A DNA stretch of 64,000 nucleotides, taken from Macrostomum lignano (taxonomy: Eukaryota). This document shows, piece by piece, positions 1,015 through 32,009 of this stretch (position 1 is its first letter; each line of letters begins with the position of its first letter). The notes beneath the pieces were generated by a model, which was not told the origin of the DNA, made no database searches, and saw only the letters and a list, made by a program, of their open reading frames with translations. The stretch is from assembly GCA_002269645.1 (NCBI GenBank), contig NIVC01000337.1, positions 558,001-622,000 of the forward strand, written 5' to 3'. The position numbers and the translations under genes were made by a program.

Positions 1015-1385
1015 TCAGGAACCCTAAATCCGCTCCAGTAGGAACCCTAAATCCGCCCCCCAGTAGGAACCCTAAATCCGCCCCCCCAGTAGGAACCCTA
1101 AATCCGCCCCAGTAGGAACCCTGAATACGCCCCCTAGTAGGAACCCTAAATCCGCCCCCGCCCCAGTAGGAACCCTAAATCCGCCCCATCCCAGTAGGAA
1201 CCCTAAACCCGCCCCAGTAGGAACCCTAAATCCGCCTAAGTAGTATAGGAACCCTAAATCCGCCCCCCAGTAGGAACCTCAAATCCGACATAGTAGGAAC
1301 CCTAAATCCGCCCCCCAGTAGGAATCTCAAATCCGACATAGTAGGAACCCTAAATCCCCCCAGTAGAAACCCCAAATCCGCCCTT
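1015..1385 (+). repeat. ~24-26 bp minisatellite (AGTAGGAACCCTAAATCCGCCCCC)n, ~14 copies, downstream of GSR
   Basis: Direct reading of tandem units with small indels. Confidence 0.95.
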
Positions 1386-1502
1386 TTGACATCCGAAATT
1401 CGCTGTAAAAGGAATGCAAAATCCTGCGCAATGCTCAGAGCATGCTCAGATACTCAGTTCAGCATCTCTCCACGCCCCCAGCCCCCGAGTCCAGCGAAGA
1501 CT

Positions 1503-5855
<4,353 letters not shown>

Positions 5856-6596
5856 TCAAATTATGAAGTCGTTTTTTTGGTAAACTTATTGCAATAATTT
5901 GAAACACAAGAAATTATATGTTGAGCAGAGAAGACCAGGGTTGTATTGTTAGACAATTAACTAGCAATAAGTAAATTTGTATGCCTATACTTATATATAT
6001 TATATACATTAGACTAGATTGTTTAAATTGCAGACTAGTATAAAATACTGCATAATTAGTAGTTTAAGACACATTAATACTATTGACTCTATATATACTT
6101 TTTCTTAGTACTTTATTTATAGTAAAAATATCAACATTGCATTCATAAAATTTATATTAGGGAACTTTTATTTGATATCCTATTAAAAAGTAGAGTCATG
6201 GGAGAAAATATATTAAATAATAATAGCAATTTATATAGTGGAGCCTAAGTAACTTATACACAAATGAAATATCATTCTGCTCATAGTGACATCAAAATAT
6301 TCAATGGCATAGGCAAGGGGGAAGATAAGGGGATACTAGTATATCCCCCTATGGGGCTATGGGGGTCTAGTGTGGGGGCATGAAATTCATACCTGTAGTA
6401 CACCTTTCCACATTCCAAACCAAAGAGTACCAAAGAGTAGCCCTATGATCCGGCTAGTAAACTTGCATTTTTAACTAGATCATAGATACATTTGTGTAGA
6501 TTTTATTGTTGAAAACATTCATCTAAAATAGACTATCTATTACAATATCTATCTTTTCCAAAATTTGAAGCTACCTTACCTTATCTATACCTTACA

Positions 6597-8141
6597 CACA
6601 GAATATACACAGAATGCAAATCTCACATTTTGAGAACATTTTTTGCACAAGAATGGTATTCTATACTGGCTACTCTTGTTGTGAAGAAAAACTAAGTAGG
6701 CTGAATGGCACTTTACCAATTCTTTGCCATTTATTGCGGGTTTGTCCCACAGAATATAGGAAGGCTTGATAGAACCAACTCACCCCCTTATAAACTGTGC
6801 TATTTTTAGAAACTACTGGCCCTGCCTTCTGCTGCCTCTGTACTCTAAGTTAGTGCTATAGACAGCATACCTTGGGCATTCTAGCATGAGCTCGTGGCAT
6901 GAAAGCATGCAGGTCAAATGCATTATTGATCGCGCTAGCCTGTCTTTGCTGTTTTGCATTCTTTATAGCACAAGCTAGTGCTGCTGAAGCTAGGTTTGGC
7001 TTCAAAAGTGCTAATACTGAAGGCATATCTGCTAGAGTTGAATATGCAGCTTATTATGATACTGTTTTGCATGCCTGCGTCTGCTTTGAGGCTTCAGTGT
7101 GCACTGCGTATGGATGCCCCAACTACGCTGGCAAGTGTCTGCTAGGCACTAGATTTCACCAGTTTCCAGCAGCCAGAGAGCATCCAAGGCTGCAGTGAGC
7201 CAAGAAGCTCCAGATCCAATCCACCTGCAGGGCAACACTTGTGACTCAGATCTAACAGAAGCAGGTGATAAGCTCTTTGCTACATCGGATAACTTAGATC
7301 ACAAGAAGTGTGCATATGTCGGCAGTTGGTTGCTGTTCTGCTTCTTTAAAACCAAGTGCAAGTGTGAGGTGTGCTAGCAGGAACTGAAGGGAGCAATTTG
7401 ATTGGACACACTTCCTGCGACTGAAGTACAAGCGAGATGACAGCTTAGTCACCCCAAGCAGAGCAGTTATCAGAGCTGTCACTGAGATGGAATGCCAATT
7501 CAAATTGCTGGAAGTGCCAAAGTTCATGCCTGCTGGTGTGTCACACAGAATCAGCAAATTATTGGCCGATTGCAACATATTGCGACTCATTGCACTGAGC
7601 ACTCAGAGAGATGCGTGATGGGCATTGCGAGGCTATTCTCAAAGCTGCACTTATACCATTGCTGCAATGGGCACAGGATTGCGGCTCAAGAGAGAAAGCA
7701 AGGGCAAGCATTTTGCAATGAGCAATCAAGGAAGTTCAAGAGGATGAGTGTGATTGCATGAGATTTGCAATTTCTGTTGCGCCTAGCATTTCCTGCCTTG
7801 CGTGCAGGGCTAAAACTTAACCTATTGTTATATGTTTGTTACTTTCATTTTTTAGCTTATATATATATGGCAATGAGGTTATAACAGTTGTTACTACTGC
7901 TCATGACTTTGCGTACACACCATTATAAACAAATTAATTACAATGATAGCATAGCATTTATCTGCAGCATCAAAATGATGACTCAAAGCTTTCAAAGGCT
8001 GTCTTGAGCTCAATTTTTATATTCAACTTTGCATTTAAAAAATCACAGCTATTTATCAGCTTCACAACATTAGTAGTGCAAGTGCATTTATTTTCACTTT
8101 CATAGAGAACTGCCAATTTGCCATTCTATGTATATTCTATG
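6597..8141 (+). mobile_element. Internally deleted, decayed P-superfamily (THAP9/P-element-like) DNA transposon
   Basis: TIRs: 6597-6621 CACAGAATATACACAGAATGCAAAT versus the reverse complement of 8116-8141 CATAGAATATACATAGAATGGCAAAT (2 transitions, 1 indel). Flanks ACCTTACA/ACCTGACC match 6/8 (decayed 8-bp TSD). Internal remnants: THAP start CTAYGCPN...RFHQFP...Q* (7100-7198), and P-type C-terminal pieces CAYVGSW...KCKCEVC, LVTPSRAV...EMECQF and CTEH...IARLFSKLHLYHCC across frameshifts and stops. Confidence 0.8.
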
Positions 8142-8811
8142 ACCTGACCTTATTATAGCCAATAGGAAATGAGGAAATATATAGACCTACTTCTATCGAT
8201 GCAGCCATTCAGAGCTGTGGCCATCTTCTTAGTTTGTGGCAATCATGGTCATGCGCCAACAAATTAGAAAAATAACCATTTAGACTATAGCTATAAAGGA
8301 ATATTATAATATCATTTATTAAACGATTCTTTCTAAAAAACAGAAAAAAATTACTAGATTAAAAATTTTTTTAATTTAGTAGTTATATTTGCTAGGCCTA
8401 CGAAGTTTTTTTCTTCCACCAGACACTAAAACATTTTCATATAAATTGGTTAAAAGCAAACAGAGGCCAAAAGAGTAATACAGTATTACTTAGCTGCTGT
8501 CAGTGTCAGTAACACTTTAAAAGCATATTAGGTATTATGACTATGATAAATTCAATAGATTCAAAAACTTAGCTATAAGCAACCCGACTTCTATTGTAAT
8601 TTATACCATTTTTAGTTTTATATATAACCTATAGGATTAAACATAGGCCTATTTTACAATACTAATAGTGTAAACTTTAATAATTGGATGGAACGAGTAG
8701 GGGCCTACATAAAACATTCTGTGCTAAAAAATGTAAACGTAGTAATAAATTAAATAAAGTATTTGGAAGATGTATCCTCAACATTGTAACTGTTGTAATA
8801 AACTTTAAATA

Positions 8812-11800
8812 GGGGCAAAGTCAAAACGAGGGCATCGCGAGTTTACACCGTTCAAACTTTGTAATACCAAGTTTTATCTGTTTTTTAATGAGTATGACTG
8901 GTTTAATCTTCCATTAAACCGTGAAATATAAATAATATTACCATAATTAAAAAAAAATTAGTCTTTTTCGCCCCTCTAAAAGACAAAATATGTCCTTTTT
9001 TCAGCGATAATTTTTTTGGCGGAAATTCAACTACGCTGACCACGTGCGAAAAATGTCTATATGATTTACAAATTAGGGCTACAAAAATGTAGGAATTAAG
9101 GTAGATATTGAAAGTTTTAAGTTAATTTGCGTTAAATGCATGCATGAGTAATGATTTTATTGTACAAACCCTGTTGGAGTTCGAATATTCTTCGTTTTGG
9201 TGGTAAACATTAATTATGACATCCCACATGTATGCTCATATGAGAATAGGTTAAAGACTAATCTACATTGATGTATCTAATAGGATTATTCACTTTTCTA
9301 TTTTAGAAATAATTTAGCATTAAATCCAAGCTTTTTTATTAAAAAACCCTAACATATTACCTACTGTATAATATTCTACAACAATATAAAGATACTTTTT
9401 AATAGTTAGGGAGCACAAAGTGATTTTCTCCAGTAGTCTGTTGTAACAAAATGAATAATTGCCAGCTTTTAGAATTACAATATGTTATTACACACTTATC
9501 AAGCTTGAAGCATTTTTTTTCTTTACTAAATGGCACTCTTTGTTGGCTCCTGAATGTCATATATGTTAGTTTTTGTCATGATTTTTTTCTCCGGAAGCCC
9601 ACTGTGTGGAGCATGTACAATGAAAAGCTTAGATATTTCATAAAGGCACTGCAAAGAACCCTATAAAGAAGCATTTTTTTTGCTTTACAGCAGGGAGGAC
9701 CTAATTTAATTTTATTGCCAATTAATGTACAATTTGTATCGAATTAGGATTTAGTTAGTTATTTTTGATGATATTTATTTTGCTTTAAATTTTATGCTGA
9801 ATAAGTTGAGTTAATTTTTGTAAAAATTGCTTTAAACATTTATTTATTGACTGTCAGTTAAAATTTTTAATGACTAGCTATTCTAGTCTAAGGCCACCAA
9901 AGATAGTAGAATATCAAAGATTAATCAGAGACGTCACTTACTAACACCAACTAATCAGGTCTGATTGACTTTAAATTTACTTAGAACCAAATTCATTGGT
10001 TTTTTTAATTGAAATCAGATTTACCTAGGATCAATAATTTTGGGGCATCATGAAGATTATAACATTAGAATAACTTATGTAATCATGCTCAAATAACTTG
10101 ATACTCGTAATTTAATATCTTGAAATCTACAAGAAGACAGCAAAAAATACAGACAAAGCGTTCACTCATTATCTCTCTGACAGTAAAATGTTCCATCTCC
10201 ACAGTGTACCTTTCAGCTATGAAAGAAAAAGAAGAAAACAAGAAACAGCTAGAGATGAAAATATTACGGAAAAGTATAAGATGAAAAGAAAAAGGAAAGG
10301 AGAGAATGCTACTGCTACTAGCAGTAGTGCATAAAATACGGAGAGAGAAAAAATATGCCAATATATCTGAGCTGAAATTCCCGTTCTCATTATATGTATT
10401 TTCTAACCTTTTCAGAGCATGCCATTTAGGCCATCTAGGAAACAGGTGAAGCAGGAACAGCAGCAGCGCTACATAGAAAAAAAATTTGACAGCTATGCTG
10501 ACTACCTGCAGCATGAGAGACGGCGCGCCTATCGACGCTACCATGGCTGTTCACCACCACCAGATGCCGGAGAAAGGACGACACGGTCAAAACTTTCCCG
10601 CTCTGATGCTGCCCGGTTACGAGAGCGCAGGAAGTTGGTTGAGCACTACGACGATGCTATCTTTAGTCATCAGCGGACCATCAACAAGTTGCGTCTCAAA
10701 CTGCGCAGAGAGCAGCGCCAATCAGCTAAGGCGGAGCGCCGACACAAAGATGCTGAAATGGCGAGGCATGTAATACAGGATGCGATTGCCAGAGTACGGC
10801 GTTTTTCCATCTGCCGGAAGATGACACGGTGCATTGTGGCAAGCACACCAGTTGGGGCACAGCGCAAGGCAGTGCTGAAGTTTTTTGGTGCAACAGCGAA
10901 AATTCTGAAAAGGCAAGCAGTAAAACGAATCAAAGAGAGACAACAGCACATTGTCGACTTCTTTTATGACGATGAAAATTCCCGTGCCAGTGCTGCAAAG
11001 CATGAGACAATCACGGGCGTCGACCGCGTGACTGGCGAAAAGGAGAAGCGGCAGAAGCGATACTTGTGTGACACCCTGAAGTCGCTGCATAGCAAGTACC
11101 TCGCCGAGTTTCCTGAGCGTCGCCAGATCAGCCTCTCTACATTTAGACGGTGGAAACCGTTCGAGGTAAATTTAATTAATTATCTGATACTGCTATGAAC
11201 TGTGCCAGCTTGTGCAGCTAACATATCATTTTACACCCTCCCTTGATTGACAAAGCCCAAATCTAATCGATTTCTACGTACAGTACTTCTTCGCTGCTAT
11301 ATATGTTATTCCTACGAAAAAATAAATTAAAAAAATATGAGACCGACACTTCAATCTAGAGACTTTGGTGTACAACTCCGACTCAATTCCAATTCAATCG
11401 AATTTGTCTCAATTCATTACAGGTAGTCAAGCCGCGTCTCTGCGACAGGCCGCTGTGCATGTGCATGCAATGCACAAATTTGGAGTATCTGGCGAAGGCT
11501 ATGCACACTGCTCGCCTGATACCCTGCACCAGCCTTCGCGATCTGCTGCAGCTCTTCGTCTGCAGGGACGATTCTCCTGCCTGCCTCATGCGTGCCTGTG
11601 ATGACTGCAGGACGAAGTCGCCAGTTGTCAACGAGGTAGCGGCTGCGAAGCCTCGCGTGACGTATGAGGCTTGGAGACAGCGCACGGACGGTCGCAGCGG
11701 TGTAGAGGTGGTCAAGTTGATAGCAGAGTGCCAGGAAGCAGTCAGTCTGCTTCACTGCAAACTGCGAGCCTTTGCCTCCCACTTTCACCGCATTAGGAAC

Positions 11801-13521
11801 CAGTTTCGCGCAATAAAGTTCCTCAAGTTGACGCTGCAGCCTGGCCACCTTTTACTGCACGTCGACTTCTCGGAGAATTATGCGGCAAAATACAGCAAAG
11901 AGGTGCAGTCAGCGCACTTTGGCGATCAAGACAGTATAGTCCTGCATCAGGGAGTTGGATACGTCAGTGGATGGAAGCCGACTTCATTTATTACTGTTTC
12001 GGACGTCAAGGCTAAGACTGCCGATGCAATTGCCGCGCACCTCAAGCCTGTACTACTGTTTTTTCTGAACGAGTGCGAAGATCTGGGCGTCCCCATTCGC
12101 CGGGTGTCGATGCTTAGCGACTCACCATCCAGTCAATATCGCAGCAGGAAGATGATATATATCTTCAATCGTCTACTGCTGCACCTTGACATTACTGAGT
12201 GGCAATGGTTGTACACCGAGGCTGGCCATGGCAAAGGAGCTGCCGATGGTGTCGGCGCGGCTGTTAAGCGCCGCTGTGATCAAATCGTTGTCAGCCGAGG
12301 CAATGTCATCACGCCACAGGACGTCCTATCGGCTATACGATCGGCTGACAATCCGCTAAAGGTGTTATCTTGGTTGATTGAGGAGCGGGATATTCAGGAG
12401 TTCCGCAACATACTGGAGATGCTGAAGTTGTCCGACATGCGGGACATCTCCAAGATGCATCACGTATGGCGAACCGAAAAATGCCCCCCACTGCAGGTTC
12501 AGTATCGAGCACTCACCTGCACATGCCTACCAGGAACACCATGTTCTTGTCCTGCTCCTCTGCTCTGGACGCCAATCAACGCCACACGGAATTCTCGCAC
12601 TAGTGCTAGTACTGTTGTTGCCTCTTCCTCTGTCGCTGATAGTGAACAGGGCCAGGGACGAAGCGGTGGATGCGGACGCAGGCATGGACGAGGCCGTGGC
12701 CGTGGAAGAGGGCGTGGCGCTCGGAGTGCTGTCGCCGAGGTTAATGCATGCGATGCTGAGATCTGTCTGCAGCCATCAGATGCCCAGTGGGTGCAGTGCG
12801 ATGGTTGCAAGCGCTGGTTGCACTCTCAGTGTGTCGATCTGCCTCCGCAAACTGACATCAGCCGGCAAAGGAACTTCTTCTGCGATGTCAGCTGCATGAA
12901 TGCTCGAGAATTGTAAAGTATGACGTCGATTACACGCGACGATGGTGTTAGTTGAGGAAAGTACATGTAGTTTTAAACTTCTTACATTACTTTTAAGCCA
13001 AGGAGAGAAAATGTCATAAAACGAGAAAAACACTTAGCTCCGGCTGTACTCGATGCGATAAATGTATTGTAGAAACAGAATATAATCCTTACGATAACGA
13101 CACAACCTATGGAGATAAAACTTCCGTACTGTAGCTACACTATAAAGTACGATGGAAAGTAAAGAGGAAGATAAAAAACAACTCTATACTCGTAAAGAGC
13201 ACTCAAGACAGAATGCCAGTGTACGAGTACGAGTACCAAATAGAGAAAACGAACATATAGCTACGATAGCCCGGCACAAGCCCAAAATATTCCATATTTT
13301 CATTTGTCTCAGATATAATAGCCTTCCAAGTCAAAATCAATTTTGAAGCTAAATACTCGTATGCATGTATGTGTAAGTAAAGTAAGACGAGGTAAACCGA
13401 TACCCCCGATTTGACATAAGTGAACATTTTTAAACCATGCGCTTAAAGTTCCGTACAGATCAGAACAGAAAATCCATGTGGCTGTCTCAAGAAGGGTAGA
13501 CAAGTTATTTGGCTATGCCCC
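8812..13521 (+). mobile_element. Candidate boundaries of the Sola2-like element
   Basis: Right end 13501-13521 (reverse complement GGGGCATAGCCAAATAACTTG). Two possible left partners: 8812-8825 GGGGCAAAGTCAAA (12/14) or 10090-10100 CAAATAACTTG (11/11). No 4-bp TSD is visible; the 8812/13521 pair has only TA on each side. Confidence 0.35.
10419..12916 (+). CDS. DDD transposase (Sola2-like) with C-terminal PHD finger, 2 exons, ~746 aa, apparently intact
   Basis: Exons 10419-11165 and 11423-12916 joined by a phase-0 GT-AG intron give ...FRRWKPFE|VVKPRLCDRPLCMCMQCTN. Catalytic motifs HVDFSENY (D at 11864), SDSPSSQYR (D at 12119) and GHGKGAADGVGAAVKR (D at 12245). GR-rich tract at ~12669-12722. 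C4HC3 PHD CDAEIC...WVQCDGCKRWLHSQCV...FFCDVSC at 12749-12895. The Sola2 assignment is from motif recall, not a search. Confidence 0.85.
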
Positions 13522-16331
13522 TATCCAGTTTCAAGTTTCAAGTTTCAAGACAAATTCGAATCTCACAAAGCTCTAAATAAAGCTTTTAAGGCCTTTTAAT
13601 TTTTAAAAAGAAAAAGACGAACAGACAACAACAATAGGTTTTAGAAGTTTTAGGCACAAGTATTAAAGTCCTGAAGCAGATCAATTAACTTAAATTCAAA
13701 GCAATATTTTCGGTATATCTCAGGCCTACACAATAGGCCTACACAATAGCACGCTGACAAACATAAGGTCCTTAAAAAGAAAAAGGTGCGCCTCGTGGTA
13801 TGTGCGAAAATGTAGGCCACATAGCCACCAGAATTCGCGGTGCCATAATCCAAAAGTAAGCTGCGCAGCACCTCCTGAACCAGCTGTGGCCTGTGGGCAG
13901 AAGTGGGCTGCTAAGTGGAGTCGCCAACATTGCAACAGTTTGTTTGGATAGACTAGGTTTGTACATAAATAAAGTGCTTGATTCACTCAACCAATTGTGA
14001 AGATGAAATGCAGGAACTCCACTAGTTTCATTGTTTACATTGGGCTTTAAGTAGGTAAGGCCTAAGGCCTAGAGCTCAGAATGAAAGGCATATGAAGAGC
14101 AGTCTCAAAGAAGTCCTGGCATTGCTTGAATAAAAGTGAAAAACATCATTTTAAATAAGGTTAAATAATTTCTATTAGAGCAGATTAGGAATATAAAATA
14201 GATTACAATATAAATTAAATCTGTTAGTAGACATTAAATCCCTGATTTTTTATCAAAACTATCCAATAGGAAATATTGCTATATTCAAATGCATTTCTGA
14301 AGAGAATAGATATTGCTTTTTGCTTCTTATATTGTAATTATGTTCTAAGTTCTTAAAACTCTAGTTGTAACTTGTAATATATCATGAATGAAAATATATT
14401 AATCTTTTTCAAAATATTCCAAGCCACTTTTTATATTCTATTTACATTTTAATATACAAAGTTTGAAAGTTAAAAAAATTAAAAAAAGTTATTAATTGTT
14501 TTACCTGCTACTTATTAATTATTTAGCTATACATGGGGTATATTTACAAGTGCGAGTGCATAGTTATGCCTATGGGCTATAGTAAGCAGTTCAGTATTAG
14601 TTGATAATATGAATAGTCTATGGACTATGGCTATAAAAACATGTCTCAATTTCAAAGTAATTCTAAGCTTTACGAATTCGTATTTACACTACATGTCTCA
14701 TTACTACGTCATTAGCAAAAAATTATTGACATGGGCAAATCAAATGGGACATGGATAATAAAATATTAATCTGAACTAGACTACCAATATAAATTACAGC
14801 ATGGATGAAGCAATTTTATAACCAACTTAAGGACACCTACACCTATACGTAGCGTGTCATTCCATCCATTCAGTAAAATTATTTATACATCATTGTCGTT
14901 TGCCTATTTGTTCGTAAGCTAAAAAACGAGAGTATTTCAGAACACAAACAGGCGCGAAGTAAACAAATTAAGCAGTTTAACAAACTCCAACTAAATATTT
15001 ACTTTAAAAAGCATTTATTGCAATATTTATTGAACAAAAATTAGTTTTATGCATTAGTATAAAACATTTAATTGTTGAATATTATATTTAGTTCCTAATT
15101 CTGCGTCCGTACAGTTCCGTAAGAGTTAAAATTAACAAATTGGTAGGAAACTTAACAAGGGGTATATTTTGTGCTTTAAAAATGTTTTTCAAGACCACTT
15201 CACCGAGATATAAAAAATTGTAAAAAAAATTCCCAATTGAAACAACAAATTTTTTTCTACATTTTCTGACTCCCCAGTTTTGACTTTAACCGAATAAAGT
15301 GAACTGTTTGCTTGAGTTAAAAAAACTGCGAAAAGTTGTCTATAGATTCTGGCCGCGCGATACTACGCTGCTCTCGTTATTCACGTAGTAGTAGTATGTC
15401 GTATCATGATATCTGACCCTTTTTGCTGCACTTATTTGTGATATATTCCAGCAAAACTGTACACGGGTGACGTCAAAGGCTGAATATTTTATCAATAGTT
15501 GTTGTACGATGCTTTGTGTGTGTTTCACGCGACCAACCTTAGGTTGAGCTTGCATAGTTCTATAAATTGACGCGCGCGCACACAACTCTGACAGTCTTGT
15601 CCAGCTCTCGACCAAGCTTTTTACTCGCGAATACGGCAATACGCTCGTGTAAATTAGCTCATTTACTTAAATTCGCCTTATGACAGACAATGTCACAACA
15701 AGTCACAAGAATGTCGATTTAGGCCTAGGGATGAAAGAAATGAAATCAAAGCTTTGAGCAGGTTGTCTGTACCGTAAATTTTCTGCTCTATGTTCGACAT
15801 GGTGTCTCTTGAATGTTTGACATGGAGTCATGTATATGTTTGACATGGTGCTTCTTTTATTAATGTGTTGTGCATAAAAAAGAATTACTAAGCGGCTTTT
15901 GAGCCAGAAATCTTAATAAAATGCTAGATACTTACTATTTTAAGTTGTAAGCCAATTTACGTTATGTCGATAAAAAACAACATAGCTGACTATTTGTGAA
16001 AGATTTATACTATTCTACTAGTCGTTGTAGCTCGTAACGTATTACTCCAGCTCGAGTGCTCTTAAGGAATCTGATGAGCAGCCAGCAGCTAAGAGAGCAT
16101 CCAATTGGAACATTTAATGAAGTAAAAAGACAACATGCGCGATTTCTTTCTTGATGTTTAAATTAAAGCTTTCAAAACCGGGACCGGGCTTGGCCACAGA
16201 CACTTCTCAGAACTAACTGCTATTCAATCGATTTCTAAAAAATGCTCAAATTAATTTACGAGTATAAACGAAGAACACCCAGAAAGCAAAAGCGCAGCCA
16301 TTGAAAACTTAAAAGTAACTTGAATTAAAGC

Positions 16332-19102
<2,771 letters not shown>

Positions 19103-19479
19103 ACCCTCGGAGCCTTCGTTTGCCGCCTTCAGTTGGACGCTTACCATGAATTTATAATTTCGAGCATCTTGTCAATCTGCTCAAGTTGTCTTGAGCATCG
19201 TATGAACGGCCTTCTCTTCTATATTTTTCTCAAAGCCTAGAAATACTTTGATGCCGATGACAGACTGTGCTACAGAGTTTAATTTTACCGTCGGTGCCTG
19301 TTTTTACAAAATTAGATTTTTATGCTTACAAGAATGCCGCGCTCACGGCGCTGACTGCGGACTAATGGAAAGAAGTAAATTTGCCTTGCGCTTTGCTTAA
19401 CTGTTTTACATTTTTCATTATTGATTTACTCTGCCTTCCATTGGGAATAATAATCAGGGTTCAGCGCGATAGATCTTGG

Positions 19480-20035
19480 CACCCCCTTCCTGCGAGACGA
19501 GACACCCCTTCCTGTACGAGACATTCCAGAACTGCAAGATGAGACACCCCCTTCCTGTACGAGACACTACAGAACTGCAAGATGAGACACCCCCTTCCTG
19601 TACGAGACACTACAGAACTGCAAGATGAGACACCCCCTTCCTGTACGAGACATTCCAGAACTGCAAGATGAGACACCCCCTTCCTGTACGAGACACTACA
19701 GAACTGCAAGATGAGACACCCCCTTCCTGTACGAGACATTCCAGAACTGCAAGATGAGACACCCCCTTCCTGTACGAGACACTACAGAACTGCAAGATGA
19801 GACACCCCCTTCCTGTACGAGACATTCCAGAACTGCAAGATGAGACACCCCCTTCCTGTACGAGACACTACAGAACTGCAAGATGAGACACCCCCTTCCT
19901 GTACGAGACATTCCAGAACTGCAAGACGAGACACCCCCTTCCTGTGCGAGACATTCCAGAACTGCAAGACGAGACACCCCCTTCCTGTGCGAGACATTCC
20001 AGAACTGCAAGACGAGACACCCCCTTCCTGTACAG
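19480..20035 (+). repeat. 43-bp minisatellite (GAGACACCCCCTTCCTGTACGAGACATTCCAGAACTGCAAGAT)n, ~13 copies
   Basis: Tandem units with ATTCC/ACTAC variants; intergenic, upstream of the fibrinogen-domain gene. Confidence 0.96.
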
Positions 20036-20392
20036 GACCCCAGTCTCTTGTCCGAGACCCTGTTCCTGTAGAAGTCTGCTACCCAATTCAAAATTTCATT
20101 TTCCCCTGCTCTGTTTGTGCAAACGAATTTCACTTGCAAGTCAGAGAGTGGTCTCCGCACACAGCTACAGCAAATGTTTTTTCTTTGAATTTCATTTCAC
20201 CTTTTTCTCTGTGGAAAGTCCTGCCACTGTGACCGGGACTTCGCCAGCAGCTTGCTTTCACTGCCAACAAAGCCGGTCAGGCCTTAGCAACCGTTATTTA
20301 CTTTAGTAACCACCCGCCGCAGCTTTGCGGAGTCTATTTAAAGCAGCTCAGCTTAGAGGGGGAATTTCAAAGCCGAGCAGAAAACTAATAAA

Positions 20393-21603
20393 ATGCAAAT
20401 GCAGTCAGTGATGTTGTTTAGAGCGATTCTGGGTCTTCAGTTTGTAGCTGCGCTGGCGGCTGCTCAGGGTGAGTCCAGACTTAAATTAGCTCGATTTGCC
20501 GAATTCTTGCAAGAAAGTCAACCATTTTGCTCTACGCCCAACAGCAGCCTTCGAGTTCGACTTGATCGCTTCGAACGCCTCCTGTGCTGCCAGTTCGGTC
20601 ACCGTGAGCGCTCGCAGTGACATCGAGTGCGCTGTGAAATGCGCTCAAGCTGGCAGCAGTCTCTCCTACAGCTTCATCAACGGAGTCTGCGTCCTGTTCG
20701 ACAGCGCCGACTGCGCCGCATCCGATGCTGCGTCAGTGTACCGGAAGCAATTGGACGGGGGTGGGTTTGCGCTCTGCTTCAGTAGCTTCAATAGCCAAAT
20801 TTATATCTTCGGAGTCGAACGTATCGATGCTGATTTGATTTTGTATTCGTTGATTCACAACAGTACAAAAACTAACTTTACATGCAGTTCCAATACCAAC
20901 GGAGAGCTCGAGTAGCGCAGCTCCCGGGATAACGACAAGTGCTCAAATCCCCAGCTTCCCCATACTGAGTCCCGGATACCAGCAGCAGATCGGCGGCCGG
21001 ACATTCTGGGTGTTCCAGCAGCGACAGACGGGCCAGATCGCCTTCAACAGGAGCTGGGATGACTACGTTGCCGGGTTTGGGAACGCCACCGAGTTTTGGG
21101 TTGGTGAGTTCGACTTTTTTTAAAGACCTTCTTCGGTAAACTTCTAAGAAAGCAGTGAAAAATGAAGAGAATCTTTGTTCTTGGCAGGACTTGAACAAAT
21201 CCACAGCTACACTTTGGCCCAAGTCAGCAGCTTGCGAATCGAGATTTTCACTGCATTCGGCGAGTTCTACGTGTTCGAGTGGCTCAACTTCACCATCGGG
21301 GACTCCGGCACGAACTACAGGATGAACTACAACAGCTTCGTTAGCGCCAACTCCACCACCAACTGTGACTTCTTGTCCAGGGCTCGGGGCCAGCAGTTCT
21401 CCACCTTCGACAAGGACAACGACGGTGCTTCTTACAGTTGCTGCACCAAGTATGGGGGCGGCGGCTACTGGTGGGAAGCTTGCATGAACTCCAACCCGAA
21501 CGGCGTGTACTCAACTGAGACGTCCAGCTCCTCCCAGATGGCCTCGTCTTGCATCGGAGGCTACAAGGCTCTGCGGGCGATGCGGATGATGCTGCAGGGA
21601 TGA
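20393..21603 (+). CDS. Secreted fibrinogen-related protein (signal peptide, PAN/apple-like Cys domain, fibrinogen C-terminal domain), ~307 aa
   Basis: Exons 20393-20468, 20545-20760 (NAGNAG alternative 20548), 20888-21103 and 21188-21603, all phase 1. Motifs WVFQQR...FNRSWDDYVAGFG..EFWVG, LRIE, FTIGDSGTNYR, FSTFDKDND..C...GGGYWW..C..SNPNGVY. AATAAA at 21788 and 21830. Confidence 0.9.
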
Positions 21604-22074: not shown

Positions 22075-25000
22075 GGGGAGGGCGATTCTCTCTGGAGTGA
22101 GGGAGGGCGATTCTCTCTGGAGTGAGAGAGGGCGATTCTCTCTGGAGTGAGGGAGGACGATTCTCTCTGGAGTGAGGGAGGGCGATTCTCTCTGGAGTGA
22201 GGGAGGGCGATTCTCTCTGGAGTGAGGGAGGGCGATTCTCTCTGGAGTGAGGGAGGGCGATTCTCTCTGGAGTGAGGGAGGGCGATTCTCTATCTGAAGT
22301 GAGGGAGGGCGATTCTCTCTGGAGTGAGGGAGGGCGATTCTCTCTGGAGTGAGGGAGGGCGATTCTCTCTGGAGTGAGGGAGGGCGATTCTCTCTAGAGT
22401 GAGGGAGGGCGATTCTCTCTGGAGTGAGGGAGGGCGATTCTATCTGGAGTGAGGGAGGGCGATTCTCTCTGGAGTGAGGGAGGGCGATTCTCTCTGGAGT
22501 GAGGGAGGGCGATTCTCCATCTGAAGTGAGGGAGGGCGATTCTCTCTGGAGTGAGGGAGGGCGATTCTCTCTGGAGTGAGGGAGGGCGATTCTCTCTGGA
22601 GTGAGGGAGGGCGATTCTCTATCTGAAGTGAGGGAGGGCGATTCTCTCTGGAGTGAGGGAGGGCGATTCTCTCTGGAGTGAGGGAGGGCGATTCTCTCTG
22701 GAGTGAGGGAGGGCGATTCTCTCTAGAGTGAGGGAGGGCGATTCTCTCTGGAGTGAGGGAGGGCGATTCTCTCTGGAGTGAGGGAGGGCGATTCTCTCTG
22801 GAGTGAGGGAGGGCGATTCTCTCTGGAGTGAGGGAGGGCGATTCTCTATCTGAAGTGAGGGAGGGCGATTCTCTCTGGAGTGAGGGAGGGCGATTCTCTC
22901 TGGAGTGAGGGAGGGCGATTCTCTCTGGAGTGAGGGAGGGCGACTCTCTCAGAGTGAGGGAGGGCGATTCTCTCTAGAGAGAGGGAGGGCGATTCTCTCT
23001 GGAGTGAGGGAGGGCGACTCTATCTAGAGTGAGGGAGGGCGATTCTCTCTGGAGTGAGGGAGGGCGATTCTCTCTGGAGTGAGGGAGGGCGATTCTCTCT
23101 GGAGTGAGGGAGGGCGATTCTCTCTGGAGTGAGGGAGGGCGATTCTCTCTGGAGTGAGGGAGGGCGATTCTCTCTGGAGTGAGGGAGGGCGATTCTCTCT
23201 GGAGTGAGGGAGGGCGATTCTCTCTGGAGTGAGGGAGGGCGACTCTATCTAGAGTGAGGGAGGGCGATTCTATCTGGAGTGAGGGAGGGCGACTCTCTCA
23301 GAGTGAGGGAGGGCGATTCTATCTGGAGTGAGGGAGGGCGATTCTATCTGGAGTGAGGGAGGGCGATTCTCTCTGGAGTGAGGGAGGGCGACTCTCTCAG
23401 AGTGAGGGAGGGCGATTCTATCTGGAGTGAGGGAGGGCGATTCTATCTGGAGTGAGGGAGGCGATTCTCTCTGGAGTGAGGGAGGGCGATTCTCTCTGGA
23501 GTGAGGGAGGGCGATTCTCTCTGGAGTGAGGGAGGGCGATTCTCTCTGGAGTGAGAGAGGGCGATTCTCTCTGGAGTGAGGGAGGACGATTCTCTCTGGA
23601 GTGAGGGAGGGCGATTCTCTCTGGAGTGAGGGAGGGCGATTCTCTCTGGAGTGAGGGAGGGCGATTCTCTCTGGAGTGAGGGAGGGCGATTCTCTATCTG
23701 AAGTGAGGGAGGGCGATTCTCTCTGGAGTGAGGGAGGGCGATTCTCTATCTGAAGTGAGGGAGGGCGATTCTCTCTGGAGTGAGGGAGGGCGATTCTCTC
23801 TGGAGTGAGGGAGGGCGATTCTCCATCTGAAGTGAGGGAGGGCGATTCTCTCTGGAGTGAGGGAGGGCGATTCTCTCTGGAGTGAGGGAGGGCGATTCTC
23901 TCTGGAGTGAGGGAGGGCGATTCTCTCTGGAGTGAGGGAGGGCGATTCTCTCTGGAGTGAGGGAGGGCGATTCTCTATCTGAAGTGAGGGAGGGCGATTC
24001 TCTCTGGAGTGAGGGAGGGCGATTCTCTCTGGAGTGAGGGAGGGCGATTCTCTATCTGAAGTGAGGGAGGGCGATTCTCTCTGGAGTGAGGGAGGGCGAT
24101 TCTCTCTGGAGTGAGGGAGGGCGATTCTCTCTGGAGTGAGGGAGGGCGATTCTCTCTAGAGTGAGGGAGGGCGATTCTCTCTGGAGTGAGGGAGGGCGAT
24201 TCTCTCTGGAGTGAGGGAGGGCGATTCTCTCTGGAGTGAGGGAGGGCGATTCTCTCTGGAGTGAGGGAGGGCGATTCTCTATCTGAAGTGAGGGAGGGCG
24301 ATTCTCTCTGGAGTGAGGTAGGGCGATTCTCTCTAGAGTGAGGGAGGGCGATTCTCTCTGGAGTGAGGGAGGGCGATTCTCTCTGGAGTGAGGGAGGGCG
24401 ATTCTCTCTGGAGTGAGGGAGGGCGATTCTCTCTGGAGTGAGGGAGGGCGACTCTATCTAGAGTGAGGGAGGGCGATTCTATCTGGAGTGAGGGAGGGCG
24501 ACTCTCTCAGAGTGAGGGAGGGCGATTCTATCTGGAGTGAGGGAGGGCGATTCTATCTGGAGTGAGGGAGGGCGATTCTCTCTGGAGTGAGGGAGGGCGA
24601 CTCTCTCAGAGTGAGGGAGGGCGATTCTATCTGGAGTGAGGGAGGGCGATTCTATCTGGAGTGAGGGAGGCGATTCTCTCTGGAGTGAGGGAGGGCGATT
24701 CTCTCTGGAGTGAGGGAGGGCGATTCTCTCTGGAGTGAGGGAGGGCGATTCTCTCTGGAGTGAGAGAGGGCGATTCTCTCTGGAGTGAGGGAGGACGATT
24801 CTCTCTGGAGTGAGGGAGGGCGATTCTCTCTGGAGTGAGAGAGGGCGATTCTCTCTGGAGTGAGGGAGGGCGATTCTCTCTGGAGTGAGGGAGGGCGATT
24901 CTCTATCTGAAGTGAGGGAGGGCGATTCTCTCTGGAGTGAGGGAGGGCGATTCTCTCTAGAGTGAGGGAGGGCGATTCTCTCTGGAGTGAGGGAGGGCGA

Positions 25001-28000
25001 TTCTCTCTGGAGTGAGGGAGGGCGATTCTCCATCTGAAGTGAGGGAGGGCGATTCTCTCTGGAGTGAGGGAGGGCGATTCTCTCTAGAGTGAGGGAGGGC
25101 GATTCTCTCTGGAGTGAGGGAGGGCGATTCTCTCTGGAGTGAGGGAGGGCGATTCTCTCTGAAGTGAGGGAGGGCGATTCTCTATCTGAAGTGAGGGAGG
25201 GCGATTCTCTCTGGAGTGAGGGAGGGCGATTCTCTCTGGAGTGAGGGAGGGCGATTCTCTCTAGAGTGAGGGAGGGCGATTCTCTCTGGAGTGAGGGAGG
25301 GCGATTCTCTCTGGACTGAGGGAGGGCGATTCTCTCTAGAGTGAGGGAGGGCGATTCTATCTGAAGTGAGGGAGGGCGATTCTCTCTGGAGTGAGGGAGG
25401 GCGATTCTCTCTGGAGTGAGGGAGGGCGATTCTCTCTGGAGTGAGGGAGGGCGATTCTCTCTGGAGTGAGGGAGGGCGATTCTCCATCTGAAGTGAGGGA
25501 GGGCGATTCTCTCTGGAGTGAGGGAGGGCGATTCTCTCTGGAGTGAGGGAGGGCGACTCTCTCAGAGTGAGGGAGGGCGATTCTATCTGGAGTGAGGGAG
25601 GGCGATTCTATCTGGAGTGAGGGAGGGCGATTCTCTCTGGAGTGAGGGAGGGCGACTCTCTCAGAGTGAGGGAGGGCGATTCTCTCTGGAGTGAGGGAGG
25701 GCGATTCTCTCTGGAGTGAGAGAGGGCGATTCTCTCTGGAGTGAGGGAGGGCGATTCTCTCTGGAGTGAGGGAGGGCGATTCTATCTGAAGTGAGGGAGG
25801 GCGATTCTCTCTGGAGTGAGGGAGGGCGATTCTCTCTAGAGTGAGGGAGGGCGATTCTCTCTGAAGTGAGGGAGGGCGATTCTCTCTAGAGTGAGGGAGG
25901 GCGATTCTCTCTGGAGTGAGAGAGGGCGATTCTCTCTGGAGTGAGGGAGGACGATTCTCTCTGGAGTGAGGGAGGGCGATTCTCTCTGGAGTGAGGGAGG
26001 GCGATTCTCTCTGGAGTGAGGGAGGGCGATTCTCTCTGGAGTGAGGGAGGGCGATTCTCTCTGGAGTGAGGGAGGGCGATTCTCTATCTGAAGTGAGGGA
26101 GGGCGATTCTCTCTGGAGTGAGGGAGGGCGATTCTCTCTGGAGTGAGGGAGGGCGATTCTCTCTGGAGTGAGGGAGGGCGATTCTCTCTAGAGTGAGGGA
26201 GGGCGATTCTCTCTGGAGTGAGGGAGGGCGATTCTATCTGGAGTGAGGGAGGGCGATTCTCTCTGGAGTGAGGGAGGGCGATTCTCTCTGGAGTGAGGGA
26301 GGGCGATTCTCTCTGAAGTGAGGGAGGGCGATTCTCTCTGGAGTGAGGGAGGGCGATTCTCTCTGGAGTGAGGGAGGGCGATTCTCTCTGGAGTGAGGGA
26401 GGGCGATTCTCTCTGGAGTGAGGGAGGGCGATTCTCTATCTGAAGTGAGGGAGGGCGATTCTCTCTGGAGTGAGGGAGGGCGATTCTCTCTGGAGTGAGG
26501 GAGGGCGATTCTCTCTGGAGTGAGGGAGGGCGATTCTCTATCTGAAGTGAGGGAGGGCGATTCTCTCTGGAGTGAGGGAGGGCGATTCTCTCTGGAGTGA
26601 GGGAGGGCGATTCTCTCTGGAGTGAGGGAGGGCGATTCTCTCTAGAGTGAGGGAGGGCGATTCTCTCTGGAGTGAGGGAGGGCGATTCTCTCTGGAGTGA
26701 GGGAGGGCGATTCTCTCTGGAGTGAGGGAGGGCGATTCTCACAGAGTGAAGGAGGGCGATTCTCTCAGAGTGAGGGAGGGCGATTCTCTCTGGAGTGAGA
26801 GAGGGCGATTCTCTCTGGAGTGAGGGAGGGCGATTCTCTATCTGAAGTGAGGGAGGGCGATTCTCTCTGGAGTGAGGGAGGGCGATTCTCTCTGGAGTGA
26901 GGGAGGGCGATTCTCTCTGGAGTGAGGGAGGGCGATTCTCTCTAGAGTGAGGGAGGGCGATTCTCTCTGGAGTGAGGGAGGGCGATTCTCTCTGGAGTGA
27001 GGGAGGGCGATTCTCTCTGGAGTGAGGGAGGGCGATTCTCTCTGGAGTGAGGGAGGGCGATTCTCTATCTGAAGTGAGGGAGGGCGATTCTCTCTGGAGT
27101 GAGGGAGGGCGATTCTCTCTGGAGTGAGGGAGGGCGATTCTCTCTGGAGTGAGGGAGGGCGACTCTCTCAGAGTGAGGGAGGGCGATTCTCTCTGAGAGA
27201 GGGAGGGCGATTCTCTCTGGAGTGAGGGAGGGCGACTCTATCTAGAGTGAGGGAGGGCGATTCTCTCTGGAGTGAGGGAGGGCGATTCTCTCTGGAGTGA
27301 GGGAGGGCGATTCTCTCTGGAGTGAGGGAGGGCGATTCTCTCTGGAGTGAGGGAGGGCGATTCTCTCTGGAGTGAGGGAGGGCGATTCTCTCTGGAGTGA
27401 GGGAGGGCGATTCTCTCTGGAGTGAGGGAGGGCGATTCTCTCTGGAGTGAGGGAGGGCGACTCTATCTGAGTGAGGGAGGGCGATTCTCTCTGGAGTGAG
27501 GGAGGGCGACTCTCTCAGAGTGAGGGAGGGCGATTCTATCTGGAGTGAGGGAGGGCGATTCTCTCTGGAGTGAGGGAGGGCGATTCTCTCTGGAGTGAGG
27601 GAGGGCGACTCTCTCAGAGTGAGGGAGGGCGATTCTATCTGGAGTGAGGGAGGGCGATTCTATCTGGAGTGAGGGAGGCGATTCTCTCTGGAGTGAGGGA
27701 GGGCGATTCTCTCTGGAGTGAGGGAGGGCGATTCTCTCTGGAGTGAGGGAGGGCGATTCTCTCTGGAGTGAGGAGGGCGATTCTCTCTGGAGTGAGGGAG
27801 GGCGATTCTCTCTGGAGTGAGGGAGGGCGATTCTCTCTGGAGTGAGGGAGGGCGATTCTCTCTGGAGTGAGGGAGGGCGATTCTCTCTGGAGTGAGGGAG
27901 GGCGATTCTCTATCTGAGTGAGGGAGGGCGATTCTCTCTGGAGTGAGGGAGGGCGATTCTCTATCTGAAGTGAGGGAGGGCGATTCTCTCTGGAGTGAGG

Positions 28001-31000: not shown

Positions 31001-31332
31001 TGAGAGAGGGCGATTCTCTCTGGAGTGAGGGAGGGCGATTCTCACAGAGTGAAGGAGGGCGATTCTCTCTGGAGTGAGGGAGGGCGATTCTCACAGAGTG
31101 AAGGAGGGCGATTCTCTCAGAGTGAGGGAGGGCGATTCTCACAGAGTGAAGGAGGGCGATTCTCACAGAGTGAAGGAGGGCGATTCTCTCTGGAGTGAGG
31201 GAGGGTGATTCTCTCTGGAGTGAGGGAGGGCGATTCTCTCTGGAGTGAGGGAGGGCGATTCTCTCTGGAGTGAGGGAGGGCGATTCTCTCTGGAGTGAGG
31301 GAGGGCGATTCGCTCTGCAGTGAGGGAGGGCG
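22075..31332 (+). repeat. 9.3-kb satellite of 25-bp unit (GGAGTGAGGGAGGGCGATTCTCTCT)n, ~370 copies
   Basis: Direct reading; 27-bp (TCTATCTGAA) and 24-bp variants are interspersed. Confidence 0.99.
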
Positions 31333-31703: not shown

Positions 31704-32009
31704 CTGCAGTTCTCAAGTGTGCAAGTTTTCCCTGTAATCACGGATAGTCAAGGTGAGCTCCCAAATTGAGAATATTTGTGCATTCACCTGATTGCGTTTG
31801 AGTTCAGCTCTGTCGTAGCGACCGCCCCCTGCTCTGCGAGCTCGGCCAGGCCATGAGCGCTCGCAGCGACACTGAGTGTGCTTTGAAATGCGCTCAAACT
31901 GGTGGCAGCCTCTCCTACAGCTTCATCAACGGAGTCTGCGTCCTGTCCGACAAGGCTGACTGCGCCGCATCCGGAGCAAAATTTATCTGGCAGAAGCAAA
32001 GCAAAGCCG
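31704..32009 (+). pseudogene. Truncated, frameshifted paralog of exons 1-2 of the fibrinogen-domain gene
   Basis: SARSDTECALKCAQTGGSLSYSFINGVCVLSDKADCAAS is near-identical to 20605-20725. There is a 2-nt insertion at ~31848-31852 relative to the intact gene, an upstream stop in the exon-1-like piece, donors at 31753 and 32010, and no fibrinogen exons downstream. Confidence 0.8.

What the first reader, a model, noticed from the sequence alone, without database searches (positions are those of the whole stretch)
10419..12916. Intact, intron-containing DDD (Sola2-like) transposase fused to a PHD finger and a GR-rich tail
Seen: the two ORFs in the track splice in frame into one ~746-aa protein with all three catalytic Asp motifs, Cys clusters, a GRGRGRGRG tract and a complete C4HC3 PHD at the C-terminus. 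Established: PHD fingers read histone H3 tails, and RAG2's PHD targets the RAG1 recombinase to H3K4me3. Inference: this may be a chromatin-guided transposase (target-site selection by histone marks) or a domesticated nuclease. I cannot tell without a search whether the fusion has been described for this superfamily.
Basis: partly seen in the sequence, partly recalled or inferred. Interest (0 to 1): 0.75.

Follow-up and report, generated by a model that had tools for sequence, protein, structure and literature searches.

The report
Sola2 transposase gene with PHD finger
This flatworm (Macrostomum lignano) locus holds an intact gene for a cut-and-paste transposase of the little-studied Sola2 group, ending in a histone-reading PHD finger where most relatives carry a Tudor-like domain; this copy has no recognisable transposon ends.

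Summary
Exons 10419-11165 and 11423-12916 join across a GT..AG intron into a 746-aa protein that is collinear with intron-less relatives.

- **Catalytic core:** an RNase H-like fold with invariant D397, D482 and D524. It matches published Sola2 transposases (hhalign probability 95%, E 3.8e-8).
- **Tail:** a Gly/Arg-rich linker, then a complete C4HC3 PHD finger (Pfam 26.1 bits, cut-off 24). It is closest to KDM5A/B PHD3, and both cage tryptophans (W705, W714) are kept. Core and PHD lie in one uninterrupted ORF, so the fusion does not depend on the intron.
- **Family:** very large (22,410 clusters at 50% identity). Relatives are proven transposons: one has 27-bp TIRs in near-identical copies, with a CTAG duplication at one copy.
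- **Rarity of the PHD:** most members end in a Tudor-like barrel. The RG+PHD tail is limited to a small clade: three intact tails and two decayed ones.
- **This copy:** two clade members, one from M. lignano itself, have homologous 18-23-bp TIRs. This locus has none within 4.6 kb upstream or 3.4 kb downstream.

My reading is a chromatin-tethered Sola2 transposase that is stationary here, possibly domesticated. Histone binding and mobility were not tested. I rate it a new variant of a known kind.

The parts
10419..11165 (+). Exon 1 (aa 1-249): basic, largely helical N-terminal region. It includes the family-conserved N-terminal basic motif and probably binds DNA.
   Evidence: ORF; splice and translation; collinear with the N-terminus of paralog P0002; long helices in the AF2 model.
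11166..11422 (+). Intron, 257 nt, GTAAAT...TTACAG.
   Evidence: Removing it restores a gap-free alignment to intron-less relatives. The UniRef model P0001 uses the same junction. No RNA evidence was available.
11423..12916 (+). Exon 2 (aa 250-746 plus stop): Cys cluster, catalytic core, H/C knuckle, RG linker and PHD in one uninterrupted frame.
11456..11608 (+). Conserved Cys cluster (C261, C263, C266, C296, C303, C308, C311), a presumed zinc-binding module ahead of the core.
   Evidence: Nearly invariant columns in A1; positions.
11837..12295 (+). RNase H-like catalytic core (aa 388-540). Catalytic codons: D397 at 11864-11866, D482 at 12119-12121, D524 at 12245-12247.
   Evidence: Invariant D/D/HGK..D. 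hhalign to Sola2_DFa-2 gives probability 95%, E 3.8e-8. AF2 pLDDT is about 90, with D397 on strand 391-402, D482 just after strand 476-481 and D524 in helix 522-539. Best Foldseek hits are PIWI and terminase RNase H folds.
12455..12550 (+). C-terminal His/Cys knuckle (H595, H596, C603, C615, C617, C623, C625), conserved across the family as 'HQ....LSC.C....C.C'.
12638..12721 (+). Gly/Arg-rich, predicted disordered linker (aa 655-682). The GRGRGRGRGRG run starts at aa 671.
   Evidence: pLDDT is below 50 from aa 637 onward. An RG tract is shared by clade members P0002-P0006 and P0172.
12749..12895 (+). PHD finger (aa 692-740), C4HC3, with cage tryptophans W705 and W714.
   Evidence: Pfam PF00628 26.1 bits, cut-off 24. 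Best PDB matches are KDM5B PHD3 2ma5 (E 7.5e-7), SHL, KDM5A PHD3, ALFIN and EBS, with both Trp aligned. The same motif is in P0004 and P0172.
5808..10418 (.). Upstream AT-rich unique flank. It has no TIR and none of the family's terminal motif.
12917..16319 (.). Downstream AT-rich unique flank. It has no TIR and none of the family's terminal motif.
   Evidence: The next gene (fibrinogen-related) starts at about 16320.

Best explanation
This is an intact, two-exon gene for a Sola2-superfamily DDD cut-and-paste transposase.

Shown or modelled parts of the protein:
- a basic helical N-terminus;
- a zinc-type Cys cluster;
- an RNase H-like core with D397, D482 and D524;
- a His/Cys knuckle;
- a tail made of a disordered Gly/Arg-rich linker and a KDM5-PHD3-like PHD finger, where most family members carry a Tudor-like barrel.

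Inferred mechanism: the N-terminal and zinc modules bind DNA, and the DDD core cuts and joins it. The PHD, through its W705/W714 cage, docks the enzyme on methylated H3K4 tails, probably H3K4me3. That would direct activity to active, promoter-proximal chromatin. It is the same logic as RAG2's PHD for RAG1, or chromodomains for chromoviral integrases, but built into one polypeptide.

The tail was present in the ancestor of a small clade of TIR-bearing transposons. The copy in this window has no recognisable ends. It is therefore a stationary transposase gene. It may supply enzyme in trans, or it may be kept by the host.
For: Identity:
- Homologues reach E 1e-174.
- The family has 22,410 clusters at 50% identity.
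- The three acidic residues are invariant.
- hhalign to published Sola2 transposases gives 95% (E 3.8e-8) and 73.6% (E 2.9e-5) (sequences from PMC3627910 supplement 3).
- The core models as an RNase H fold at pLDDT about 90.

The family is mobile:
- A 4,614-bp element has perfect 27-bp TIRs in about 100% identical copies with different flanks, and a CTAG duplication in L012.
- Two members of the RG-tail clade have homologous TIRs: L003 with 23 bp and M. lignano L001 with 18 bp.

PHD:
- It passes Pfam's cut-off.
- The best solved relatives include known methyl-H3K4 readers, among them KDM5A/B PHD3 (that they read H3K4me3 is from memory), and both cage Trp align.
- Zinc ligands and both Trp are conserved in P0004 and P0172, which are only 41% identical overall.
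- The clade is monophyletic at 100% bootstrap, with PHD tails or remnants on both main branches.

No ends at this locus. A positive control confirmed that the method finds real TIRs.
Against: - No histone-binding, DNA-binding or transposition data exist for any Sola transposase known to me (from memory).
- The PHD region modelled poorly (pLDDT below 50, only two aligned sequences). Cage geometry is therefore inferred from sequence only.
- PHD-like cross-brace fingers can bind DNA instead, as the piggyBac CRD does (PMC5861402, listed).
- Short TIRs of 12-13 bp, as reported for Dictyostelium Sola2 elements, would fall below the chance level in these AT-rich flanks, so mobility is not excluded.
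- Copy number in the M. lignano genome could not be measured.
- The intron lacks RNA support.
- Animal Sola2 consensus sequences in Repbase and Dfam could not be compared.
Confidence: 0.6

Rival explanations
1. Domesticated gene. The transposase has been immobilised and is kept by the host as a chromatin-targeted nuclease or DNA-binding factor, and no longer serves a transposon.
For: - The ORF is intact and every conserved residue is kept.
- Neither flank has a TIR or the family's terminal motif GGGT(C/G)(G/A)TTC, over 4.6 kb upstream and 3.4 kb downstream. Clade relatives have their TIRs 1.1-2.5 kb from the ORF.
- There is only one copy in 64 kb.
- Only one protein cluster of this type is on record for M. 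lignano (P0001, 1 member), against 3 members for the TIR-bearing paralog type.
- If the TIRs had decayed neutrally, a 2.2-kb ORF would not be expected to stay open (inference).
Against: - No ortholog from another species, no synteny and no dN/dS could be obtained.
- Transposon genes are often left out of annotations, so low protein counts are weak evidence.
- Short or atypical ends cannot be excluded.
- Relatives in another organism behave like decaying transposon copies: an in-frame stop followed by a PHD remnant in L004, and a truncated PHD in L005.
Confidence: 0.4
2. Ordinary autonomous Sola2 transposon. Its ends are simply too short or too diverged to detect from a single copy, and the PHD guides choice of integration site.
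For: - The ORF is intact.
- The clade's ancestors had TIRs.
- Published Sola2 elements can have TIRs of only 12-13 bp, below the chance level in these flanks.
- The best TIR+TSD candidate is 9780/13704, 15 bp with 2 mismatches and TSD TATT.
Against: - By my estimate that candidate is within chance expectation for AT-rich flanks, and its arms look nothing like the L001/L003 TIRs.
- The TIR consensus shared by both clade relatives and the family-wide terminal motif are both absent.
- There is no second copy in the window.
Confidence: 0.3
3. The C-terminal finger does not read histones. It binds DNA (for example transposon ends) or mediates protein contacts, as the PHD-like cysteine-rich domain of piggyBac does.
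For: - piggyBac's cross-brace finger binds DNA in a sequence-specific way (PMC5861402, title and abstract).
- The adjacent RG tract is a typical nucleic-acid-binding element (general knowledge).
- The last ligand pair is spaced C-x3-C rather than the usual C-x2-C.
Against: - The finger passes the Pfam PHD cut-off.
- It aligns best to KDM5A/B PHD3, and both cage tryptophans are conserved across clade members that are 41% identical overall.
- Other family members carry a Tudor-like barrel, another methyl-mark reader fold, at the same position.
Confidence: 0.2
4. Annotation or assembly artefact: the two ORFs, or the core and the PHD, do not belong to one product.
For: The only database model for the locus (P0001) is a chimera that splices across the core and runs on into a neighbouring fibrinogen-related gene. 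No RNA data are available.
Against: - Core and PHD share one uninterrupted ORF.
- The splice junction restores exact collinearity with intron-less paralogs.
- Independent contigs encode the same core-RG-PHD order.
Confidence: 0.03

Closest known systems
Sola2 DNA transposons (Sola superfamily; Bao, Jurka, Kapitonov & Jurka 2009, recalled from memory; Sola2 transposases of Dictyostelium fasciculatum and Polysphondylium pallidum in Bao & Jurka 2013, PMC3627910)
   Same: - The motif order D(F)xEN ... SD ... HGKxxxD matches, and the profile match is significant.
- A C..C motif precedes the core in both.
- Relatives of the window protein have TIRs, and one copy has a 4-bp duplication, as described for Sola2.
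   Different: - Identity to the amoebozoan Sola2 proteins is only about 18-21%.
- The tail here is an RG linker plus a PHD.
- This copy has no ends.
- Animal Sola2 consensus sequences in Repbase and Dfam could not be compared.
Tudor-tailed members of the same family (for example the 4,614-bp element in L012-L015 and L021; P0012, P0018, P0033)
   Same: N-terminal basic region, Cys cluster, DDD core and His/Cys knuckle are the same, at 25-36% identity. A C-terminal reader-type module sits at the same position.
   Different: Their module is an 85-aa Tudor-like SH3 barrel with no Pfam model, not RG+PHD. They have clear 27-bp TIRs and near-identical copies.
RAG1/RAG2 recombinase (Transib-derived)
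   Same: A DDE-type RNase H-fold recombinase coupled to an H3K4me3-reading PHD that links cleavage to active chromatin (established knowledge; PMC12337333 listed).
   Different: In RAG the PHD sits on a separate subunit (RAG2) and the core is of the Transib type. Here the PHD is fused to a Sola2 core. No sequence relationship was found beyond the general folds.
Rehavkus (MULE-related) transposases with a PHD finger
   Same: A cut-and-paste transposase with a PHD finger in the same polypeptide (PMC6446971).
   Different: A different superfamily, with 9-bp TSDs and long TIRs. No sequence relationship to the core here is known.
Reader domains captured by transposons in general (chromoviral integrase chromodomains; PHD and Chromo fusions surveyed by Grau-Bove et al., bioRxiv 10.1101/2021.11.30.470311)
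   Same: A chromatin reader is fused to a mobile-element enzyme, with tethering as the proposed role.
   Different: That survey identified transposon parts by their protein domains. The Sola2 core has no Pfam model, so I infer this kind of fusion would probably have been missed.
KDM5A/KDM5B PHD3 (3GL6, 2MA5)
   Same: Best sequence match for the finger. It shares the C-x4-C start, the 'WVQCDG.C..W.H..C' core and both cage tryptophans.
   Different: Only the roughly 48-aa finger aligns, and the last ligand pair is C-x3-C. Whether it was captured from a host KDM5 gene is unknown.

Membership tests
Sola2 (Sola superfamily) transposase | DDD catalytic triad on an RNase H-like fold | tested here: met
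   D397, D482 and D524 are invariant in 29 sequences. They align to the D, D and D of Sola2_DFa-2. The AF2 model places them on or next to a central strand, a later strand and a helix of a confidently modelled core. Best Foldseek hits are RNase H-fold nucleases.
Sola2 (Sola superfamily) transposase | Significant sequence similarity to accepted Sola2 transposases | tested here: met
   hhalign of profile A1 against Sola2_DFa-2 gives probability 95%, E 3.8e-8 over 164 columns. Against Sola2_PPa-1 it gives 73.6%, E 2.9e-5. Repbase and Dfam animal Sola2, and Sola1/Sola3 as negative controls, were not available.
Sola2 (Sola superfamily) transposase | Terminal inverted repeats flanking the gene | tested here: not met
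   At this locus nothing rises above shuffled controls. The clade TIR consensus and the terminal motif are absent. The feature is met in relatives L014 (27 bp), L003 (23 bp) and L001 (18 bp). The protein therefore belongs to the family, but this copy is not shown to be a complete element.
Sola2 (Sola superfamily) transposase | 4-bp target-site duplication | tested here: inconclusive
   This cannot be assessed here because no ends were found. Among relatives, only L012 shows CTAG|...|CTAG. The other contigs look like chimeric assemblies of a repeat. The L003 flanks read TACA and TGCA if the element starts at GGGT.
Sola2 (Sola superfamily) transposase | Several copies at different genomic sites | not testable with these tools
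   The M. lignano genome could not be searched. There is one copy in the window. Multiple copies are shown only for the L012-type relative.
PHD finger (PF00628), methyl-H3K4 reader subtype | C4HC3 zinc ligand pattern and a score above the curated threshold | tested here: met
   Ligands are C692, C697, C708, C711, H716, C719, C736 and C740. The score is 26.1 bits against a cut-off of 24.
PHD finger (PF00628), methyl-H3K4 reader subtype | Aromatic cage residues at the positions used by known H3K4me3 readers | tested here: met
   W705 and W714 align with the two Trp of KDM5A and KDM5B PHD3. That these two Trp form the cage in KDM5A PHD3 is from memory. They are conserved in P0004 and P0172.
PHD finger (PF00628), methyl-H3K4 reader subtype | Actual binding to a methylated H3K4 peptide | not testable with these tools
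   This needs peptide array, ITC or NMR. The AF2 model of the tail had low confidence.
Domesticated transposase gene | Loss of transposon ends while the ORF stays intact | tested here: met
   The caveat is that very short ends would escape detection.
Domesticated transposase gene | Single-copy syntenic orthologs in related species under purifying selection | not testable with these tools
   No other Macrostomum genomes were accessible. The closest relatives are 37-48% identical paralog-like sequences.

The most novel reading that the evidence does not exclude
Sola2 transposases as a group are guided by chromatin. Their C-terminal position is a swappable slot for a histone-mark reader: a Tudor-like barrel in most lineages, and RG+PHD in the Macrostomum-type clade. 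The end-less, intact PHD copy in M. lignano would then be a host-retained, H3K4me3-targeted DDD nuclease. That would be a single-chain, independently evolved analogue of RAG1/RAG2.
Probability: 0.2. Interest if true: 0.8.

Novelty: new variant of a known kind. Interest (0 to 1): 0.55.

Why it matters
No Sola transposase has been studied biochemically, as far as I know. How DNA transposons choose chromatin targets is understood for only a few systems.

This case offers a natural pair within one family: the same DDD core carrying either a Tudor-like barrel or a PHD finger. It is a ready-made test of whether a reader module alone redirects integration. If it does, these enzymes could be starting points for transposases whose targets are set by chromatin state.

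The end-less but intact copy is also a candidate for an early or complete domestication event of the RAG type. M. lignano is a flatworm in which transgenesis is possible (from memory), so the question can be tested in the animal.

If histone binding fails, this is simply one more lineage-specific transposon gene.

Tried and rejected
- **TIR/TSD search at the locus.** I used the repeat finder, a custom TIR plus 4-bp TSD scan, and blastn-short of one flank against the reverse complement of the other, with shuffled controls. The best candidates were 9780/13704 (TATT TSD) and 8809-8825/13508-13524 (no TSD). By my estimate the first is within chance expectation, and nothing exceeds the shuffled controls.
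- **Clade TIR consensus and terminal motif in the window.** Nothing was found near the gene.
- **Non-coding similarity** between the window flanks and L001, L003 or L004: none.
- **Search with the C-terminal 207 aa alone:** no hit at E <= 0.01 in 5.8 billion proteins. A short domain cannot reach significance in a database that size.
- **Two other C4HC3-like strings** in family tails (P0038, P0078): not supported by Pfam.
- **Papers.** The published Sola2 alignment (supplement 10 of PMC3627910) is held only as garbled machine text, so I took the sequences from supplement 3 instead. Bao et al. 2009 and Yuan & Wessler 2011 are not held. What I say about them is from memory.
- **Look-ups.** P0001 is not on record as a called gene.
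- **Metagenome scan.** It returned only Tudor-type relatives at 39% identity or less, apart from two short fragments. That was useful as proof that the family is mobile, but not for this copy's ends.


Full report
**What is there**

On the + strand, ORFs 10419..11198 and 11459..12916 join through a canonical intron. The donor is GAG|GTAAAT after 11165 and the acceptor is TTACAG|GT before 11423, removing 257 nt. The product is a 746-aa protein.

The junction recreates 'RWKPFEVVKPRLCDR', which aligns without a gap to intron-less relatives. The spliced protein is collinear over aa 1-634 with an intron-less paralog in the Macrostomum lignano genome (P0002, 45% identity, locus L001).

The window is M. 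lignano DNA or something very close to it. A UniRef M. lignano model (P0001) maps to the window at 84-100% identity per segment. It is a chimera running from 5679 to 21600: it splices across the catalytic core and continues into a neighbouring fibrinogen-related gene.

The catalytic core, RG tract and PHD all sit in the single exon-2 ORF. The fusion therefore does not depend on the intron call.

**The enzyme**

Pfam recognises nothing in the protein except the PHD. This fits published remarks that Sola, Zator, Kolobok and similar cores have no Pfam model (PMC5751038).

A 29-sequence alignment (A1) shows invariant D397 (in DFSEN), D482 (in SDSP), H518-G519-K520 and D524. It also shows a nearly invariant Cys cluster (C261, C263, C296, C303, C308, C311) and a downstream His/Cys knuckle.

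I took two published Sola2 transposases from supplement 3 of Bao & Jurka 2013 (PMC3627910) and compared them with profile A1:
- Sola2_DFa-2: probability 95%, E 3.8e-8 over 164 columns.
- Sola2_PPa-1: probability 73.6%, E 2.9e-5.

Both alignments run across all three acidic motifs: MDFKEN with VDFSEN, WSDGAKHF with LSDSPSSQY, and YHGKSDVD with GHGKGAAD.

AlphaFold2 with A1 models residues 260-630 at pLDDT about 90. D397 sits on strand 391-402, D482 comes just after strand 476-481, and D524 lies in helix 522-539. The best Foldseek matches in the PDB are PIWI domains and terminase nucleases. These are RNase H-fold enzymes, and no Sola structure has been solved.

The label 'DDD, Sola2-like' is therefore supported.

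**The family is a transposon family**

A profile search over 1.84 billion representative proteins found 22,410 clusters at E <= 0.001 and 4,393 at E <= 1e-30.

A metagenome scan returned 71 loci. Five of them (L012-L015, L021) share a 4,614-bp segment at about 100% identity, set in different flanks. The segment is bounded by perfect 27-bp TIRs (GGGTGATTCTACAGGAAACGACAAATT). In L012 it is flanked by CTAG on both sides. That element encodes a two-exon transposase of this family.

Closer to the window protein, two members of its own clade have TIRs that are clearly homologous to each other:
- L003 (P0006): CAGGGTCGTTCGCAAATCTTGGG, 23 bp, perfect.
- M. lignano L001 (P0002): GTCGTTCTCAAAATCAGG, 18 bp, perfect.

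All three TIR types begin with GGGT(C/G)(G/A)TTC.

**The tail**

The finger has ligands C692, C697, C708, C711, H716, C719, C736 and C740. It scores 26.1 bits against Pfam PHD, whose cut-off is 24.

Among solved structures, its best matches include KDM5B PHD3 (2ma5, E 7.5e-7 with the tail alone), SHL, KDM5A PHD3, ALFIN-like proteins, EBS, DIDO1 and Spp1. Several of these are known methyl-H3K4 readers (from memory). The alignment keeps 'WVQCDG.C..W.H..C', including W705 and W714. From memory, these two Trp form the methyl-lysine cage in KDM5A PHD3.

The same RG tract plus PHD follows the core in uninterrupted ORFs of P0004 and P0172. Both are only 41% identical to the window protein, yet all ligands and both Trp are conserved. 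Decayed versions follow an in-frame stop in L004 and are truncated in L005.

A neighbour-joining tree on 319 gap-free columns gives:
- the seven RG-tail proteins as one clade, 100% bootstrap;
- window plus P0002, 86%;
- P0004-P0007, 96%.

PHD tails or remnants occur in the window, in P0003 and in the P0004-P0007 group, and TIRs occur in both groups. The common ancestor was therefore most simply a TIR-bearing transposon with this tail.

**The PHD tail is the exception**

Of 171 family proteins in hand, only P0004 shares the tail. Two further C4HC3-like strings get no Pfam PHD hit at E <= 0.01.

Instead, 73 of 112 usable tails form one cluster: an 85-aa module with consensus G.W..V.YDG..YPG...V.V.CM...G.N.FFWP..D..WY.
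- No Pfam family reaches its cut-off for this module.
- Its profile is closest to the PHF19 Tudor domain (E 0.02).
- It models at pLDDT 96 as a small all-beta domain.
- That model superposes on the SMN, TDRD1, TDRD3 and RDM15 Tudor domains, with TM-scores normalised to the target of 0.6-0.7 and rmsd 2.3-3.4 A.

The E-values are weak. I therefore call it Tudor-like, not a proven Tudor domain. Two different reader-type folds occupy the same slot in one transposase family.

**This copy has no ends**

Between 5808 and 10418, and between 12917 and 16319, I found no inverted similarity above shuffled controls. The same test recovers the TIRs of L014, L003 and L001.

The clade TIR consensus, its 12-mer core and the terminal motif are all absent near the gene. 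The best TIR+TSD candidates are what chance gives in 30% GC DNA.

In the relatives, TIRs lie 0.6-2.5 kb from the coding sequence, so the stretch I searched should have contained them. There is no second copy in the window. Only one protein cluster of this type is recorded for M. lignano, against three members for the TIR-bearing paralog type.

Very short TIRs, such as the 12-13 bp reported for amoebozoan Sola2 elements, cannot be excluded.

**Interpretation**

Shown:
- the gene structure;
- the DDD RNase H-like core;
- kinship with Sola2;
- that relatives are mobile;
- a bona fide PHD with conserved cage residues;
- the rarity of this tail within the family;
- the absence of detectable ends at this locus.

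Inferred:
- The PHD docks the enzyme on methylated H3K4, so activity would be directed to active chromatin.
- The RG linker adds nucleic-acid or partner contacts.
- The copy is stationary.

I cannot decide whether it is host-retained (about 0.4), a transposon with undetected ends (about 0.3) or a recently stranded copy.

The general idea that transposons capture PHD and Chromo readers is already in the literature (Grau-Bove et al.; Rehavkus PHD; RAG2). This is therefore a new variant, not a new kind. I found no paper that mentions both Sola2 and a PHD finger in a relevant sense.

Noticed in passing
Relatives P0012, P0018, P0033 and others; alignment A2; for example L014 3880-4170: Most members of this Sola2 family end in a conserved 85-aa module that no Pfam family matches above its cut-off. 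It models at pLDDT 96 as a Tudor-like SH3 barrel and is weakly similar to the PHF19, SMN and TDRD Tudor domains. It may be an undescribed reader domain of a transposase family.
   Followed up: partly
L012 861-5474, L013 190-4803, L014 196-4809, L015 126-4739, L021 496-5112: A 4,614-bp Sola2-type element with perfect 27-bp TIRs is present as about 100% identical copies in different flanks in several JGI metagenome samples, with a CTAG duplication in L012. It looks recently active. The host organism is unknown.
   Followed up: partly
L001 8400-8417 and 14633-14650 (M. lignano NIVC01000504.1): The M. lignano paralog P0002 lies inside a 6.25-kb element bounded by 18-bp TIRs that are homologous to those of L003. 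It keeps the RG tract, but its ORF stops where the PHD would begin. Two UniRef cluster-mates are named 'ATP-dependent DNA helicase', which probably reflects further chimeric gene models.
   Followed up: partly
window 5679-21600: The UniRef M. lignano model A0A1I8I361 (P0001) is a chimera. It combines an upstream exon (5679-5807), fragments of the transposase ORF with invented introns that remove the DFSEN motif, and a fibrinogen-related gene (exons 16320-21600). The transposase may lie between exons of, or next to, that host gene.
   Followed up: partly
window 1017-5502 and 16969-62364: Outside the AT-rich island that holds the gene, the window is mostly tandem arrays. Examples are a 25-bp unit repeated 370 times (22076-31332), a 20-bp unit repeated 114 times (32333-34620), and many AGAC, AGAT, TGTC and AGGAC arrays of 0.5-1.5 kb.
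   Followed up: no
window 31794-31999: A short partial duplicate of the fibrinogen-related coding sequence (53-73% identity to P0001 residues 845-912) lies just beyond the 9-kb minisatellite.
   Followed up: no
P0178 (NCBI MEE4248862.1): A 90%-identity cluster-mate of the PHD-bearing relative P0004 is deposited as a protein of a 'Kangiellaceae bacterium' MAG. This is almost certainly a eukaryotic contig mis-binned into a bacterial genome.
   Followed up: no
L004 3440-3560; L005 1620-1683: Relatives from JGI sample 3300040801 show decaying PHD tails: an in-frame stop followed by 'CSSGSCIRPQGRVQWIQCDGC' in L004, and a truncation after 'QQWIQWI' in L005. At least six diverged copies come from that one sample, which is typical of a transposon family in one host.
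   Followed up: partly
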